This document shows positions 37,414 to 43,778 of a stretch of DNA of 64,000 nt, one piece after another. This DNA is from Salpingoeca rosetta (taxonomy: Eukaryota; Protista; Choanoflagellata): assembly GCA_033442325.1 (NCBI GenBank), contig JAWQFM010000020.1, positions 1,127,853 through 1,191,852 on the forward strand, in the 5' to 3' direction. Within the stretch, counting starts at the first letter, position 1, and each line of letters starts with the position of its first letter. Position numbers and translations under genes: made by a program. The notes beneath the pieces are model-generated. The model was not told where the DNA came from, made no database searches, and was given only the letters and a program-made list of their open reading frames with translations.

Positions 37414-38505
37414 CTACACCTCGTGCTCCTCCTCCAGTGTGTATGCGGCAAACGCCGGATTTGTCGCCTGCATCTGCAGCTGTGCGCGCCGTCGCCTCCG
37501 CGCAACCGTCGTCGCAGCGGCAGCAGCGCCGGATACAGACATGTCCGTCTCCCGGCGGTCGCGCGCGTATGTGTGCAGCCGCGGCCGCAATCTCGCCGTC
37601 TCGGCCTCCAGCTGGCCACGTGCAGACTCGATTTTGTCCAGCAGTTCGCGTGTTGTTGTCTCCATGCGCATCATCTCTGGGGACCACTGCCGCCGCTCCA
37701 CCTGCGACCGCTCCTCCGCTGCCCACATCAGATCTCCAATCCACTCACCGAGCACCCGCACCAGGTCCATGCGGCCCCGCGCGTGCCGTTTCCCGTCCTC
37801 CCCCGCGTCCTCAATCGTCCCGCCAGCAACAGACACCCACCCGTCGCGCGTTGTCGACAGCTTCCCCACTGCCGGCGCCACGGGGGTGTCCTGTCCAAAC
37901 GCGTGCAGCAGCGCGCTTGCTCCGCGTTCGCTTGCGCGCCAGTACCGCTGCAGGTTGAGGCCTTCCTCTTCCTCGCCCTCGTCCTCCCTGCCCGCGCCCC
38001 ACGCCCGCGTCTCAAGGAACTCCACGCAGCTGCGCATGTGCTCCTCCGTGATGCCGGCCGGGTCCGCCGGCAGAAACAGCCCGTGGAACTGGAAGATGCT
38101 CGCCAGGGTGTCGCGCGCGCGCACGCCGGACGCAATGTGATTGCCGTCAGGGTACAGCTCCAGGTTGAAGTCGCAGAACCGCTTGATCGCGCTGTCGCCC
38201 TCTGGCACGGCGGTGGTCGTGTTGTTTGCACTTACCGCACTCAACCCACCCTTCTTGGTGACACCGTTGCCAGTCTCCTTTCTGGAGGAGCCATTCTTCG
38301 CTGTGCCTTGGCAGCTGCTGCCTCTGGCATCGCCGCCACTCGCGACCACGTCTTCAACAGCATTGGCGTCGTGTCGCTGTAGGCGTGCACGGCGGTGCTC
38401 GCAACCAGATGATGACACCGAGGAAGGCGCTTCCGATGATGGCGATGGTGACGATGATGTTGGTGATGGAGAGGCCGATGCCTTGGCTCCAGGGCCATCA
38501 TGGCG

Positions 38506-38551
<46 letters not shown>

Positions 38552-39388
38552 GCATCGTCGGCGCTGTCGTCGCTGTCGTCACTGCTCTGACTGTTCTCAT
38601 CCTCGCTGTCATCGCTGACGATGGTGGTCGTGGTGGCGGTAGTTGGTGTTCGCCCCAGCACTGGTTTGCCCAGCACCCTCACATCGCTCTCTCCACCCTC
38701 GAGTGTCTTCGTCTCCATGATGCCAGTGCCGGTGTCGTCACAGGGCACATCACCTCCCCCGCTGGAGACGAGCAGCGGCAGGACTGCAATGCGCCGCGAC
38801 CGCTGCTGCTGCAGTGCCAGCTCCATCTCCGTCAGGAAGTTGTCGGGCGTGTGCTTGAATGTCCCCTCCCGCACCTCTGCCAGGGATTCGTGCGACAGCA
38901 GCGGGAGGTACGCGCAGGAGCGCATGAGCCCTTTCCTGAACCGCTGCCGCCAGTCGTCGCCCTCGCGAATGTCCTGTCGGTCCAGGAAGCACACGACGCG
39001 GTGGCCCGTGGTGAGGAACAGCCGCTGCAGCCGCGAGCACAGCTCCTGCGCCAGCTCGTCGTGCACATCGCGCCGGTAGCTGATGAAGAAGTGGAACGTC
39101 TTTCGCTTTGCGTAGCGCTTGCGGTACACGTGGTACAGCCAGGCGAGGGCACCCACGAGCAGCAGCACGAGCAGCACCACCAGCACCGCCGCCGTCTGGC
39201 CGGGGGTGAGGGTCCTGCTTGCCGAGTCAGCGCTTGAGCGCGTGGTGCACGCCAGGCGGCCCGTGGAGAGGCGGTGCAACACAGGGTACGGGGAGACCGG
39301 GTCACACGACAGGCAGTCTGTGGCGTTGCACGTGAGGCAGTTGCTGCCAGCCGGGCACTGATCGCATCGCCCTCCAGTTGTCAGCACA

Positions 39389-39480
<92 letters not shown>

Positions 39481-42195
39481 CAAGGAGACGGCGCGGGATC
39501 CACGGGGACACACGCGCAGGCAGGAGGAGCGGTTGACAGAGACGAATAGACCAGCCTCACACCGCGAACACATGTCCGCACTCACATCGCACGAGATGCA
39601 GTGCTGCGCTGCGCAGCTGCGGCATACCCCGCCAATGCCAGACGGGCCGGCGGAGGCGTGGAAGCCGAGCGGGCACGCGGGCACGCAGCGGCCATCGAGC
39701 AGAAGGAAGCCGTTCTGGCACACGCGGCACTCGTCGTCGACGCGGCACACGCGGCAGTTGGGCTCCAGACACGGCCGGCACACGCGCGAGATGGTGGCGT
39801 TGGTGCTGGCGATGGTGGCGGTCGTCGCGTTGGTGGCGGTGCTGGCAGGTGCAGATGTTGTCAGCAGTGCGGCCGCCGTTGCAGCTGTCGTTGTTGTTGT
39901 GGTGGTTGTGGTTGTTGTGGTGGTTGTTGTGGTGGTTGTGGTTGTCGTGCTTGCGATGGACATGGATACGTCAAGCACATCTGGGACGCGACCGTCGGTG
40001 GCGTCGCACACGGACCGGTCGACGCAGCGCCCGCTGAGCAGATATGCCGCTGCTGCATCCGGGGAGCAGCGCGTGCACACGTCGCTCTCGCACTCGATAC
40101 AGTTCACCTCCGTGCACGGGCGACACACTCCGCCACGAACGCCAATCGTGCGCGTCCCGAGCGCGTGTGTCCCTGGCGGGCATGTGTGTATGCATGCGTC
40201 GTTGTGGAGGAAGAGGCCTGGTTCGCACGCCTCGCACGTGCTGGCACTGGTGCAGCTCTCGCAGCCGTCGCTGGCACACGGCGTGCACACGAGGCCGCCC
40301 GCAGCCGTTGCAGCGAACGTGCGGGCCGGGCAGCGGGCGACACACGCGCCATTGTGGAGGACAGACCCTGATGCACAGGCGGTGCAGATGCTGGCGGACA
40401 CGGGGCAGGCGAGGCAGGCGGAGTCGATGCAGGGCTGGCAGGTGCCGTTGGTGGCAGAGTAGCCCGCAGGACACGCAGCGACACACGCGCCCTCATGGAG
40501 ATAGAGGCCGGGGAAGCACTTGCGACAGTCCAAGCCGTCACTGGCAGCGTCGCACGCCTCGCATCCGGAGCTGGCACAACCTGCATCGACATGACACGCA
40601 CGAATGATAACATTGGTGTGCACACGTGAAAAGAGAGAGAGAGGGGGGGGGAGGAGTGTGATTGTGTGTGTTGGGGGGGGGAGGAGTTGTGAGGATTACA
40701 GAACGCCAATCAATGGAGGTGAAGGGGTGTCTTCTGGGAGGAGGGGGTGGGAATGGGAAGGGCACGCACGCACTTAAGCACACGCACACAATCACACACG
40801 CACACAATTACACACGCATACACACGACACACACGCACACAATCACACACGCACACACGCGTACACACACACACACAACACACGCATACACGTAAACACA
40901 CGTACACACGCATACACACACAACACACGCATACACACACAACACACGCATACACATACACACATACACACGTGAGCGAACCTCTGCAGAACGCCTGTCC
41001 GACGGTGATTGGAAACGGGGTGCTGGCCAGCTCAACGTCAACCCCGGCGAAGCGGCCGCGGAAGAGAACATTGCACGCCACGGCATCGCCCGTGTCCGCA
41101 TATGTTCCTGGCGGGCAGTTGGGCAGCACAAAGTCCAGCAGCTGCGTCTGCAGGCCCTGCAAGCCGAGCTCTGCCTGGTCAAACACGTCCACGGTCTGTG
41201 CAAACTGCTGGATGAGCTGGGAGACGTTGAGACCAAGTTGGAGGCTGAGGCGCAGGATGGCCCCGCCCTCCAGCCGCTCCTGGGCCGGCGCCCACCCGGT
41301 CAGGTCGTTGCACGACGGATAGCACGCGCGCGGTGACACACACGCGCGGTGCGAGGGGTCGTAGATGCTGGCGCCGAGGAGGGAGGTTGGGCAGGTGGGA
41401 AAGGCGGCAATGTTGTCGCGAAGTGCTGCCAGCGTCGCCTGCTGGTCCTGTGTCAAGCACGTGCAGTCGCCCACATCAACAGCAGCGAGCGGCAGCAGCA
41501 CCGTCGTCCCTGTGCCCGTGGAGGCCGTCGTGGTGGCCGTCGTGGTGGCCGTCGTGGTGGCCGCGGTGGTTGGCTGCGCTGCCGTTGTGGAGGACGTGGC
41601 ATTACCAGCGCCGCCAGTGCCGGCGTGCCTGGCTGCAATGGTGGCCGTGAGCTCAGCTGTTGCGTTGCACATGATGGCGACATCCGATGCAAACCGCGTG
41701 TCATGTGCCGCCCACGCGTGCGCGCAGCAGTCATCAACGGTGAACACGGGTCGCGCCTCGTAGGGGAGAGCAGACAGCAGCGGGGACGTGCACGCGGTCG
41801 TGGCGTTGGCGGCAGCACTGGTGCAGTTGATGATGGTGTGCGGGAGGTGCACGATGTTGCGCCGCACAGGCAGGGCAGTGAAGGCCGTGTGGGGCAGGGA
41901 GGTGAGGGCGGTGTCCGTGAGGTTGATGGTGCGCAGCAGGCTGCTCTGCGCCAGCGCCGCAAACGGTGAGCCTGAACAGTAAACACAAACACGTGCACAT
42001 GACAACGTGAACGCGTGCGTGTGTGCATGGCGTGTGGAGTGGTTGGTGAGAGGAGAGAGGACGGGAAAAAGGAGGACGGTTGAGGGGGGGGGGGAATGGA
42101 AGAAATGGGAGAAGAGGGAGGAGAGGGAGATGGGAAGAGCAAGAGGGGCAGAGGTTTACATCACACACACACACATGCCCACACACACACACATG

Positions 42196-42262
<67 letters not shown>

Positions 42263-42362
42263 NNNNNNNNNNNNNNNNNNNNNNNNNNNNNNNNNNNNNN
42301 NNNNNNNNNNNNNNNNNNNNNNNNNNNNNNNNNNNNNNNNNNNNNNNNNNNNNNNNNNNNNN

Positions 42363-42447
<85 letters not shown>

Positions 42448-43778
42448 CGCACACACACACCGTCGAGCAAGGAGAGCGGGTTGCTGTTGAGCCTGAGGTC
42501 CTGCATGCGCGGTGCTGGGGTGATGGCGCCGCTGCGAAGAGCGGTGATGATGTTGTTCGACACATCCAGCATCTGCAGCTCCTGTACAAAGACAAGCGCC
42601 TTGGCGGCGATGGCGGTGATGAGGTTGCGGCCCAGGTCGAGGGAGACCAGGTGCGGCAAGCGGCGCATCCATGATGCGCTCAGAACAGGCAAGCGGTTGC
42701 TGGCGAGGTTGAGCACGCGGAGGGAGGGCAGGTTGAGGGTGTCTGGCCGGATGTAGGCGATGAGGTTGAAGCTGAGGTCGAGCGTGTGCAGCTTCGGCAG
42801 GTAGAGCGGCAGGTCCTGGTTGAGGGCCGGGATGAGGTTGAAGCTGAGATCCAGCACCTCCAGCGACGTGAACCGAGCAAGGTGCTCTACGGGGATGAAG
42901 GACAGCCCCGTTCGCCACAGGTCGAGGTGGCGCGTGGTGACCGGCAGCACCTCCAGGTGCGCCAGCAGGACCTCGATGGATGGGATGTTTCTGCAGCTCA
43001 CGTACCCGTTCTCCAGGCACGAGCACAGGCCGCAGTCGTCCATGAGCTCGGGAGCAAACGGCCTGCAGCGCTGTGGACACTCTGTCAACGCCGTCCGCGT
43101 TGTCAGCGGCGTCACGGTACTGCCGATGTTGCTGTCTGTGTTTGTGCTTGTGGATGTCGTGGCGGTGGTTGTCGTCGTTGTTGCTGTTGTTGTCGTGCTG
43201 GTGGTGGAGGTTGTGGCGTTCACGCTGCCATCGCCTGTGGTGGAGGTGGCGTTACCGCCGGCGCCGGCGAGCGTCTCGTAGCAGTGGGTGCAGTGCCTGC
43301 ACCGCGCATCTTCGGCACAGTAGAGGTGGTCCGGGCAGTCCTGGTGGCCCGCGCACGGCAGGAGCGTGTAGCACGCCTCGCCGCACTGCAGGGCAAGGTC
43401 GAACGCCGCCACCTCTGGCAGGCTGGTGAGGTGCTCGTTGGCGCAGTCTGTGATGCACGGTTGGTGGCACACGACGCTCTCGTCGGCCTGGAGCGCCAGC
43501 ACGCATTCCACAGCGCGCAGGCAGTCGCCGCCGCTCGAGCCTGTGGATGAGCAGATGCTGGTGAAGTTGCACTGGGCGCGGCACGGGTCGTCGGGGTCGC
43601 CCACACGCGCATGCACGCCACCGCCGCCGCCACTCAGCAGCAGCACCGCTACCATGGCCACTAAGGACAGGGACACGGCAACGAGTGGCGCGCGTCTGTG
43701 CACGGTGCTTCTCGACACGGCAGTGGCTGTCGCAGCAGCCACGCCATGCACACTCCACCTCCTCAGCATCTTCATCAT
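37414..43778 (-). CDS. Toll-like receptor architecture: signal peptide, Cys-rich N-domain, LRRNT + about 8 LRRs, Cys/Thr-rich stalk, 7 furin-like Cys-rich repeats, TM, TIR domain, coiled tail; 3 exons (43778-42461, 41971-40982, 40580-37414), 1824 aa
   Basis: Both introns are GT-AG, phase 1 and join in frame (1318+990+3167 nt). LxxLDLSxNxI repeats; CxxCxxxCxxC..G..L..G.CV..CP repeats; TM AVLVVLLVLLLVGALAWLY followed by RKRYAKRK; TIR FFISYRR..CFLDRQDI..GDDW..GL.RS..YLPLLS..DNFLTEMELAL..VLPLLV. Confidence 0.85.

What the first reader, a model, noticed from the sequence alone, without database searches (positions are those of the whole stretch)
38770..39100. Receptor TIR keeps the catalytic glutamate of enzymatic (NADase) TIRs
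Seen: FFISYRR, FLD, D.W, and DNFLTEMELAL with the Glu codon at 38827-38829. Established: SARM1 (DWVHKEIVTAL), plant NLR and bacterial TIRs use this alphaC Glu to cleave NAD+, whereas animal TLR TIRs act as adaptor scaffolds. The SYRR and FLD pattern is SARM/TIR_2-like. Inference: ligand-induced clustering of a surface receptor could directly activate NAD+ cleavage or cyclic-ADPR-type signal synthesis, i.e. a receptor-enzyme immune system.
Basis: inference. Interest (0 to 1): 0.8.

Follow-up and report, generated by a model that had tools for sequence, protein, structure and literature searches.

The report
Choanoflagellate surface receptor with SARM1-like TIR
The stretch encodes the intracellular TIR domain of a large Toll-like-receptor-style membrane protein of a choanoflagellate. 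The domain looks most like the NAD-cleaving enzyme SARM1 and keeps its catalytic glutamate, so it is a good but untested candidate receptor-enzyme of a kind a 2026 preprint has already described.

Summary
Residues 509-621 of a 1069-aa minus-strand ORF (37414-40623) match Pfam TIR_2 (E 2e-11). E599 (codon 38829-38827) pairs with SARM1 E642 in a profile alignment and is Glu in 91 of 92 relatives.

It is split by a roughly 187-aa low-complexity insert, and its last third lies at 37987-38190. AlphaFold models both parts as one domain. It superposes on the whole human SARM1 TIR (Z 17.2, rmsd 2.0 Å, 137/137 residues).

The gene has three exons (43778-37414, 1824 aa): signal peptide, LRRs, furin-like Cys repeats, TM helix, TIR, conserved tail. 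It is colinear with a Salpingoeca infusionum transcript protein. It falls in the clade of choanoflagellate LRR-TM-TIR "TLRs" (Richter 2018).

A 2026 preprint shows TLR TIRs, including human TLR4, make cADPR. It also shows that an S. rosetta TIR with the same D-N-x-L-x-E motif does so in a Glu-dependent way.

Activity of this protein is untested, and no RNA reads could be laid on the gene. The gene has no counterpart in the public protein sets searched. Verdict: new member of a known kind, moderate interest. Another first-stage note in this scan (s1-431397) read the same stretch of the same DNA from an overlapping window.

The parts
37414..43778 (-). Whole three-exon gene, 1824 codons plus stop. 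It encodes a type-I membrane receptor.
   Evidence: Exons were read from the sequence with GT..AG introns, both phase 1. All three exons are colinear with the S. infusionum transcript-derived protein P0002: exon 1 at 1e-41, exon 2 at 5e-27, exon 3 at 6e-92. The junctions fall where predicted.
42461..43778 (-). Exon 1: start Met (MMKMLRRW...), hydrophobic signal or anchor segment, Cys-rich cap, Thr-rich linker and leucine-rich repeats.
   Evidence: ORF. Pfam LRR_8 at 5e-27 and LRR_4 at 7e-17. Aligns to P0002 residues 110-424.
41972..42460 (-). Intron 1 (GT..AG). It is full of GT microsatellite and contains a 100-N assembly gap at 42263-42362.
   Evidence: Sequence read. The split codon G|GC restores the frame ...LLDG|SPFAAL...
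40982..41971 (-). Exon 2: last LRR, then a Cys-containing middle region with no Pfam match.
   Evidence: Aligns end to end with P0002 residues 426-750. No Pfam family matched.
40581..40981 (-). Intron 2 (GT..AG), rich in GT microsatellite.
   Evidence: The acceptor ...gatgcag|GT gives ...AFCR-G-CASSGCEAC. P0002 reads ...KYCRACATSHCQVC at the same place.
39214..40580 (-). Furin-like cysteine-rich repeats, interrupted by poly-Thr and poly-Ser runs. This is the extracellular stalk.
   Evidence: Pfam Furin-like_2 at 4.6e-17 in 5 stretches. Colinear with P0002, which lacks the homopolymer runs.
39127..39192 (-). Transmembrane helix (AAVLVVLLVLLLVGALAWLYHV), followed by the basic stretch YRKRYAKRK. 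Only about 10 residues separate the membrane from TIR strand betaA.
   Evidence: Read directly from the translation. The same arrangement is seen in the relatives.
38761..39099 (-). N-terminal two thirds of the TIR domain (betaA to betaD; ORF residues 509-621).
   Evidence: Pfam TIR_2 profile positions 1-92 of 122. AF2 pLDDT is above 90. The family profile scores 155.9 bits.
38827..38829 (-). Codon of E599, the counterpart of the catalytic Glu (SARM1 E642).
   Evidence: Profile-to-SARM1 alignment. Glu in 91/92 relatives. Lies in predicted helix 91-104 of the model. The same D-N-x-L-x-E motif holds the validated catalytic E1118 of S. rosetta F2UB80.
38191..38760 (-). Low-complexity insert (ORF residues about 622-811; acidic, poly-Gln, Ser/Thr-rich). 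It splits the TIR after betaD.
   Evidence: There are 231 residues between invariant P616 and conserved G848, against a family median of 51. AF2 confidence is low, mostly below pLDDT 60, apart from one short helix. The reading frame has 0 stops against 3 and 7 in the other frames, and GC3 is 0.66, between exon and intron values.
37987..38190 (-). C-terminal third of the TIR domain (ORF residues 812-879: AIKRFCDF...FQFHGLFLP...VEFLETRAW).
   Evidence: Matches the family consensus and profile positions 120-195. AF2 pLDDT is 93-97. VIA-align covers model residues 5-370 against SARM1 561-700.
37417..37986 (-). Cytoplasmic tail. Two short motifs, W(I/L/M)xD(I/L/V) and (I/L)ExxRGx(L/V)(E/A), are conserved across the LRR-receptor clade.
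   Evidence: Alignment A2 has invariant W, R and G. P0002 aligns here at 9e-14.

Best explanation
The flagged stretch is the first two thirds of the cytoplasmic TIR domain of a 1824-aa type-I membrane receptor of a choanoflagellate, probably Salpingoeca rosetta. The protein runs: signal peptide, LRRs, furin-like Cys-rich repeats, one TM helix, TIR, conserved tail.

The TIR belongs to a large family that is mainly choanoflagellate. Its closest solved relative is the NADase SARM1, not animal TLR TIRs. The domain is complete, but a species-specific disordered insert of about 187 aa splits it.

It retains the catalytic Glu (E599) plus the SARM1-equivalent positions Y516/R517/R518, D548 and G555.

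Most likely mechanism (inferred, not shown): ligand binding to the ectodomain brings the membrane-proximal TIRs together, forms composite active sites, and switches on NAD+ cleavage into cADPR and/or ADPR as a second messenger.

Shown here: gene structure, domain identity, residue equivalence, conservation. Inferred: catalysis, the product, activation by clustering, and any downstream sensor.
For: Domain identity:
- TIR_2 at E 2e-11.
- 461 relatives. The named ones among the top hits looked up are mainly choanoflagellate LRR-TM-TIR or Kelch/EGF-TM-TIR receptors.

Resemblance to SARM1:
- The family profile hits SARM1 TIR best, at 8e-12, with E599 paired to E642.
- The AF2 model (pLDDT above 90 in both halves) superposes on full SARM1 TIR at Z 17.2, rmsd 2.0 Å, 137/137 residues.

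Conservation:
- E599 is Glu in 91/92 relatives.
- D594, R517 and P616 are invariant.

Gene structure:
- The tree places the TIR with LRR-type receptors, next to S. infusionum P0002 (99/84).
- All three exons are colinear with P0002.

Precedent:
- An S. rosetta TIR (F2UB80) has catalytic E1118 in DNVLLEW and a similarly extended TIR domain. It makes cADPR in E. coli, and the preprint reports that the Glu mutation abolished production in all active TIRs. TLR4 and invertebrate TLR TIRs also make cADPR.

Geometry:
- Only about 10 residues link the TM helix to betaA.
Against: - No assay was done.
- SARM1 W638 is Asn here, as in 81/92 relatives.
- In the preprint most Glu-bearing TIRs showed no product in E. 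coli (12/61 animal, 4/29 protist active). TLR2, IL-1R9 and IL-1R10 keep the Glu but point it out of the pocket.
- A family member, Aphanomyces invadans A0A418B8H0 (= P0096), was tested and not scored active. The ordered construct stopped right after betaD, which may explain this.
- The 187-aa insert could disturb folding or assembly.
Confidence: 0.55

Rival explanations
1. Scaffold-only TIR. The receptor signals by homotypic TIR-TIR recruitment of cytosolic TIR proteins (the choanoflagellate SARM1 homologue, Kinase-TIRs, TIR-ARM proteins). The Glu would then be conserved for structural or binding reasons, without catalysis.
For: - Richter 2018 proposes adaptor- and kinase-type signalling for choanoflagellate TLRs, and lists many cytosolic TIR proteins.
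- Most Glu-bearing TIRs tested in E. coli gave no product, and TLR2 keeps the Glu but is inactive.
- W638 of SARM1 is not conserved.
Against: - Near-invariance of Glu (91/92), together with D594, Y516, R517, D548 and G555, is the pattern of an active site rather than a surface patch.
- The nearest solved relatives by profile and by fold are enzymes.
- A TIR from S. rosetta with the same motif is catalytically active.
Confidence: 0.25
2. NAD+-depleting death or arrest switch. As in SARM1 or bacterial TIR effectors, activation drains NAD+ to stop or kill the cell (for example an abortive response to infection) rather than producing a messenger.
For: - The best profile and fold match is SARM1 itself.
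- Some eukaryotic TIRs in the preprint depleted NAD+, for example Guillardia theta L1IYH1, which has a related xDHVLMEW motif and a similarly extended domain.
Against: - Most active eukaryotic TIRs in the preprint did not deplete NAD+ even after overnight expression.
- In Table S4 the S. rosetta F2UB80 row as stored shows entries only for Active and cADPR.
- A plasma-membrane receptor of a bacterivore is expected to be triggered often.
Confidence: 0.12
3. Decaying or non-functional gene. The low-complexity expansions (poly-T, poly-S, poly-Q, and the 187-aa insert inside the TIR) would mark a relaxed, possibly untranscribed locus.
For: - The insert is the longest in the family and its GC3 is intermediate.
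- The gene is absent from public protein sets.
- There is no confirmed RNA evidence.
Against: - An intact 1824-codon frame runs across three exons with canonical splice sites.
- All family-invariant residues are kept.
- GC3 is 0.90-0.93 in both TIR halves.
- The insert frame has 0 stops.
- Runs guessed to be RNA hold 98% of the sampled words of 37900-39200, but only 78-87% of the longer stretch that includes intron 2.
Confidence: 0.08

Closest known systems
Choanoflagellate 'TLRs' (LRR-TM-TIR proteins; Richter et al. 2018, eLife, PMC6040629)
   Same: - Signal peptide, LRRs, single TM helix and cytoplasmic TIR.
- The nearest relatives are transcript-derived proteins of Salpingoeca infusionum, Hartaetosiga balthica and S. 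urceolata with this architecture.
- Full-length colinearity with the S. infusionum protein.
   Different: - A long furin-like Cys-repeat stalk lies between the LRRs and the TM helix. This is shared with S. infusionum only among the hits scanned.
- Large homopolymer runs, and a 187-aa insert inside the TIR.
- That paper's introduction says TLRs had not been detected in the M. brevicollis and S. rosetta genomes. This gene has no counterpart in the public protein sets searched.
SARM1 / TIR-1 TIR domain (NAD+ hydrolase)
   Same: - Best solved match by profile (8e-12) and by fold (Z 17.2, rmsd 2.0 Å, 137/137).
- Identical FISYRR strand.
- Equivalents of D594, G601 and E642, and a long loop before alphaC.
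   Different: - No ARM or SAM domains, so there is no NMN/NAD+ allosteric control and no SAM octamer ring. Here the TIR hangs directly under a TM helix.
- W638 is Asn.
- Only about 21-23% identity.
S. rosetta F2UB80 TIR and other cADPR-producing eukaryotic TIRs (Hurieva et al. 2026, bioRxiv 10.64898/2026.04.20.719644)
   Same: - The same motif set: FISYR, the Asp after betaB, D-N-x-L-x-E with the validated catalytic Glu, and P after betaD.
- A TIR domain extended to about 220 aa.
- A choanoflagellate source.
   Different: - A different gene: F2UB80 is 1352 aa, has its TIR at 1034-1255, and is not among my 150 best hits.
- I could not see its domain architecture.
- This protein has not been assayed.
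Animal TLRs (for example TLR4)
   Same: - LRR ectodomain, one TM helix, cytoplasmic TIR.
- The preprint reports a catalytic Glu and cADPR production for TLR4 and two invertebrate TLR TIRs.
   Different: - The TIR is of the TIR_2/SARM1 type. No animal TLR TIR scored E<1 against the family profile, and only 10/92 family members match Pfam PF01582.
- MyD88 and IRAK are absent from choanoflagellates.
- Common descent of the two receptor types rests on architecture only.

Membership tests
TIR domain (Pfam TIR_2, PF13676) | Significant match to the family HMM above the gathering score | tested here: met
   44.8-49.9 bits against a cut-off of 28, E 2e-11 to 6e-13.
TIR domain (Pfam TIR_2, PF13676) | Complete flavodoxin-like fold (betaA to alphaE) | tested here: met
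   The AF2 model is confident in both halves. VIA-align covers all 137-140 residues of the SARM1 TIR at Z 17.2, rmsd 2.0-2.3 Å. Pfam alone sees only profile positions 1-92, because of the insert.
Catalytic (NAD+-processing) TIRs | Glu on helix alphaC at the position of SARM1 E642 / ThsB E85 | tested here: met
   The profile alignment pairs E599 with E642. E599 lies in predicted helix 91-104. Glu in 91/92 relatives.
Catalytic (NAD+-processing) TIRs | Glu-dependent NAD+ consumption or ADPR/cADPR-isomer production | not testable with these tools
   This needs expression and LC-MS. The only indirect evidence is the active S. rosetta F2UB80 TIR with the same motif.
Catalytic (NAD+-processing) TIRs | Other pocket and BB-loop residues known from SARM1 (Y568, R569, R570, D594, G601, W638). 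The list is from my own knowledge; PDB titles show G601P, H685A and E642A were studied. | tested here: inconclusive
   Y516, R517, R518, D548 and G555 are conserved. W638 is replaced by N595, but the active F2UB80 also has Asn there.
Choanozoan TLR architecture (Richter 2018) | Signal peptide, LRR, TM and TIR, in that order, in one protein | tested here: met
   LRR_8 at 5e-27 in exon 1. TM helix and TIR in exon 3. The exons are joined by canonical in-frame introns and are colinear with a transcript-derived orthologue. The splicing itself was not confirmed by reads.
Animal TLR family (orthology) | The TIR groups with animal TLR TIRs | tested here: not met
   No TLR TIR in the PDB scores E<1 with the family profile, while SARM1 scores 8e-12. 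Animal receptor TIRs rank lower by fold, at Z 14-15. No tree with animal TLRs was built.
SARM1 orthologues | ARM-SAM-SAM-TIR architecture | tested here: not met
   The architecture is LRR-furin-TM-TIR. No ARM or SAM match was found.

The most novel reading that the evidence does not exclude
Choanoflagellate 'Toll-like receptors' are not adaptor-recruiting TLRs. They would be receptor-NADases: an LRR ectodomain wired through a 10-residue linker to a SARM1-type catalytic TIR. Bacterial or other ligands would then be converted directly into ADPR or cADPR, which could open the ADPR-gated TRPM2 channel known in S. rosetta (PMC6461439).

This would imply that the ancestral choanozoan LRR-TM-TIR receptor was an enzyme, and that scaffold signalling through MyD88 is a later animal overlay. 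In addition, S. rosetta would possess such a receptor after all, overlooked because the gene is missing from its protein annotation.
Probability: 0.3. Interest if true: 0.7.

Novelty: new member of a known kind. Interest (0 to 1): 0.45.

Why it matters
If the TIR is active, it gives a genetically tractable organism in which to test whether LRR-TM-TIR receptors signal by making NAD-derived messengers. S. rosetta has CRISPR editing (PMC7314544). This bears on the origin of TLR signalling and on the claim that catalysis is the ancestral TIR function.

Two practical points follow:
- TIRs of this family are split by a variable loop, so domain-extraction pipelines can truncate them.
- This gene appears to be missing from public protein sets, so censuses of choanoflagellate immune receptors that rely on predicted proteomes undercount them.

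Tried and rejected
Searches and look-ups that gave nothing:
- The word-based protein search with ORF residues 470-1069 and with 500-630 gave no hits. Low-complexity words swamped the first. A third search, on the furin region, found only relatives of 38% identity or less and no self hit.
- phmmer of the single TIR piece against PDB sequences gave only a spurious designed protein. The family profile was needed.
- Exact look-ups of three other window ORFs, meant to name the source record, found nothing.
- PADLOC gave only weak TIR-like hits: PDC-S66 at 1.6e-5 and ThsB at 3e-3.

Ideas considered and dropped:
- First impression of a trypanosomatid genome, from GC-rich sequence and CA repeats. Rejected: the nearest named relatives are choanoflagellate proteins, and the gene has introns.
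- The insert as an in-frame intron. Judged unlikely: 0 stops in frame against 3 and 7 in the other frames, codon-like repeats, and words held by RNA-like runs. Not excluded.

Steps I could not take:
- I did not align F2UB80 formally, because its sequence exists here only as text in a supplement. The comparison is by short motifs read by eye.

Full report
**Observation.**
The quoted motifs lie on the minus strand in the frame of a 1069-aa ORF, 37414-40623.
- FFISYRR is residues 512-518, FLD is 546-548, DDW is 556-558, and DNFLTEMELAL is 594-604.
- The codon at 38829-38827 is GAG, E599.
- Pfam finds TIR_2 at residues 512-620 (E 2.1e-11, 44.8 bits, cut-off 28) and Furin-like_2 at E 4.6e-17.
- The isolated piece scores 5.6e-13.

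**The domain is larger than the flagged stretch.**
Pfam covers only profile positions 1-92 of 122. Relatives found by an exhaustive HMMER search number 461 at E<=1e-3, with the best at 47-48% identity. They continue after strand betaD (..ILPLLVG) with a variable loop and then a conserved block, F.F..FP...V..T....F.QG.F......W.

In the window that block (AIKRFCDF...FQFHGLFLP...VEFLETRAW) begins at ORF residue 812.
- There are 231 residues between the invariant Pro616 and the conserved Gly848. The family median is 51 and the next longest is 136.
- A family profile hits the window twice in the same ORF, at positions 2-121 and 120-195, with total E 1.6e-57. It hits nowhere else in the 64 kb.
- AlphaFold2 with the 92-sequence alignment A1 gives pLDDT above 90 for ORF 505-624 and 814-879. 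The insert is modelled with low confidence.
- VIA-align superposes the model (residues 5-370) on the entire human SARM1 TIR (561-700) at Z 17.2, rmsd 2.0 Å, 137 of 137 residues. C. elegans TIR-1 follows at Z 16.3, then plant RUN1/RPV1 (about 16) and SPARTA TIR-APAZ (about 15). Animal receptor TIRs (IL-18Rbeta, IL-1RAcPb, Hydra TRR-2) score 14-15.

So the TIR is complete but split by an insert of about 187 aa, at 38191-38760.

The insert is probably coding.
- Its frame has no stop, against 3 and 7 in the other two frames.
- Its GC3 is 0.66, against 0.72-0.93 for the exons and 0.51-0.57 for the introns.
- Runs that the index guesses to be RNA hold 98% of the sampled words of 37900-39200, but only 78-87% of a longer stretch that contains intron 2.

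This last point is weak evidence, because the RNA label is only a guess.

**The glutamate.**
A profile of A1 searched against all PDB sequences hits SARM1 TIR first (8e-12). C. elegans TIR-1, AtTIR, Cat1, L6, Roq1, TIR-STING and bacterial TIRs follow. No animal TLR TIR reaches E<1.

The printed alignment pairs the family's D-n-v-L-l-E-y-e-l-A-l with SARM1 D-W-V-H-K-E-I-V-T-A-L. Our sequence aligns to the same profile columns as DNFLTEMELAL. Hence E599 corresponds to E642, the catalytic residue given for the SARM1 control in Table S4 of Hurieva et al..

Other SARM1 positions carry over through the same alignment:
- Y516/R517/R518 correspond to Y568/R569/R570.
- D548 corresponds to D594.
- G555 corresponds to G601.
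- W558 roughly corresponds to F603.
- N595 stands where SARM1 has W638.

The functional weight of these SARM1 positions is from my own knowledge. PDB titles show that G601P, H685A and E642A mutants were studied.

Conservation across the 92 aligned relatives:

| Position | Residue count |
|---|---|
| E599 | Glu 91/92 |
| D594 | 92/92 |
| R517 | 92/92 |
| P616 | 92/92 |
| Y516 | 91/92 |
| D548 | 90/92 |
| G555 | 88/92 |
| E601 (second Glu) | 68/92 |

E599 lies in the predicted helix 91-104 of the model, which is alphaC.

**The gene.**
Upstream ORFs on the same strand carry a signal-like start and LRRs. Reading the junctions gives three exons and two introns:

| Part | Coordinates | Notes |
|---|---|---|
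| Exon 1 | 43778-42461 | |
| Intron 1 | 42460-41972 | GT..AG, GT microsatellite, 100-N gap at 42263-42362 |
| Exon 2 | 41971-40982 | |
| Intron 2 | 40981-40581 | GT..AG |
| Exon 3 | 40580-37414 | |

Both introns are phase 1. The total is 1824 codons.

- Exon 1 matches LRR_8 at 5e-27.
- The three exon products align colinearly with one transcript-derived Salpingoeca infusionum protein (P0002, 1654 aa), at 1e-41, 5e-27 and 6e-92.
- The alignments break exactly at the predicted junctions...VGQAFCR|G|CASSGCEAC against ...VGIKYCRACATSHCQVC.
- The poly-Thr, poly-Ser and poly-Gln runs and the TIR insert are absent from that orthologue.
- The TM helix (39127-39192) is followed by a basic stretch, and only about 10 residues separate it from betaA. 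The same holds in the relatives.

The protein is therefore a type-I receptor with a membrane-apposed cytoplasmic TIR.

Five LRR-clade members share two short tail motifs, W(I/L/M)xD(I/L/V) and (I/L)ExxRGx(L/V)(E/A).

**Relatives.**
The named ones among the top hits looked up are mostly choanoflagellate proteins: Hartaetosiga balthica, S. infusionum, S. urceolata, Stephanoeca diplocostata and Diaphanoeca grandis.

The hits scanned have two ectodomain types in front of the same TIR:
- LRR, with or without furin-like repeats.
- Kelch propeller, Ephrin_rec_like and EGF.

The S. rosetta protein PTSG_06613 (P0013) groups in the tree with the Kelch/EGF-type receptors.

Cytosolic forms with an N-terminal TIR occur in Rhodelphis and in a chytrid, and a Monosiga brevicollis protein groups with them in the tree.

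An IQ-TREE of 45 TIRs places the window next to P0002 (99/84). H. balthica P0001 joins next (98/90), then S. urceolata P0004 plus P0011. Together these form an LRR-receptor clade separate from the Kelch/EGF clade.

90 of 92 members match TIR_2. Only 10 match the PF01582 TIR model.

**Organism.**
- The nearest named relatives are choanoflagellate proteins.
- Other notes and follow-ups of this scan call the genome Salpingoeca rosetta. I did not verify this.

No protein search returned the window's own protein, although S. rosetta proteins such as PTSG_06613 are in the library. The gene is therefore apparently not in the public protein sets. Richter et al. write that TLRs had not been detected in the M. 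brevicollis and S. rosetta genomes.

**Literature.**
Richter et al. 2018 (PMC6040629) described LRR-TM-TIR 'TLRs' in 14 of 21 choanoflagellates. They noted the catalytic Glu only for SARM1 homologues.

Hurieva et al. 2026 (bioRxiv 10.64898/2026.04.20.719644) report the following:
- Most eukaryotic TIRs outside the TLR/IL-1R clades keep the Glu.
- The TIRs of human and mouse TLR4 and of two invertebrate TLRs make cADPR in a Glu-dependent way.
- An S. rosetta TIR (F2UB80, residues 1034-1255, catalytic E1118 within DNVLLEW) makes cADPR.

Counting along the ordered F2UB80 sequence puts E1118 in the same D-N-x-L-x-E motif as our E599. This is a by-eye motif comparison only.

The Aphanomyces invadans TIR in their set is my hit P0096 and was not scored active. 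The ordered construct ends right after betaD, so it may lack the C-terminal third. That explanation is my inference.

**Mechanism.**
Shown:
- The architecture.
- A complete TIR fold.
- Equivalence and conservation of the Glu and of five other pocket or BB-loop positions.
- SARM1 as the nearest solved relative.

Inferred:
- Ectodomain-driven clustering juxtaposes the membrane-proximal TIRs and activates NAD+ cleavage, with cADPR and/or ADPR as the product.

Speculative:
- The ADPR-gated TRPM2 channel of S. rosetta (PMC6461439) as the receiver.

Rivals are scaffold-only signalling, NAD+ depletion, and a decaying gene.

**Verdict.**

What this adds:
- A specific, apparently unannotated receptor gene.
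- The point that choanoflagellate TLR-like receptors carry SARM1-type rather than TLR-type TIRs.
- The unusual split of the domain.

Sequence reads and scripts were run beside them.

Noticed in passing
window 37414-43778: The whole receptor gene has no counterpart in the public protein collections searched: there was no self hit in four searches. S. rosetta paralogues such as PTSG_06613 are present in those collections. The gene is probably unannotated, perhaps because of the N gap in intron 1.
   Followed up: partly
window 42263-42362: A 100-N assembly gap flanked by long (GT)n tracts lies inside intron 1. The true intron length is unknown.
   Followed up: no
window 40903-40958: A GT-rich microsatellite inside intron 2 tripped the read laying filter and blocked the only read-laying run. 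These letters were not sent to any search afterwards.
   Followed up: no
window 39214-40580 and 38191-38760: Long homopolymer runs interrupt the ectodomain stalk and the TIR: about 22 Thr, about 33 Ser and about 14 Gln. All are absent from the S. infusionum orthologue, so they are lineage-specific low-complexity expansions in an otherwise conserved receptor.
   Followed up: partly
proteins P0003, P0007, P0008, P0012 (Pfam-scanned); P0013 (grouped with them in the tree): A second receptor class in choanoflagellates carries the same SARM1-like TIR behind a Kelch beta-propeller, Ephrin_rec_like and EGF ectodomain. S. rosetta PTSG_06613 (P0013) groups with this class in the tree. The catalytic Glu is kept there too.
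   Followed up: partly
window 37417-37986: The cytoplasmic tail has two short motifs, W(I/L/M)xD(I/L/V) and (I/L)ExxRGx(L/V)(E/A). They are conserved in all five LRR-clade receptors and match no known domain. They could serve in oligomerisation or regulation.
   Followed up: partly
window 40983-41969: Exon 2 encodes about 330 aa with conserved Cys residues and no Pfam match. It is conserved with S. infusionum (5e-27). This is an undescribed ectodomain module between the LRRs and the furin-like repeats.
   Followed up: no
Hurieva et al. 2026, Table S4, row 32 (= P0096): The Aphanomyces invadans TIR construct tested there ends just after betaD. In this family the last third of the TIR lies beyond a variable loop, so automatic domain extraction may have truncated it.
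   Followed up: no
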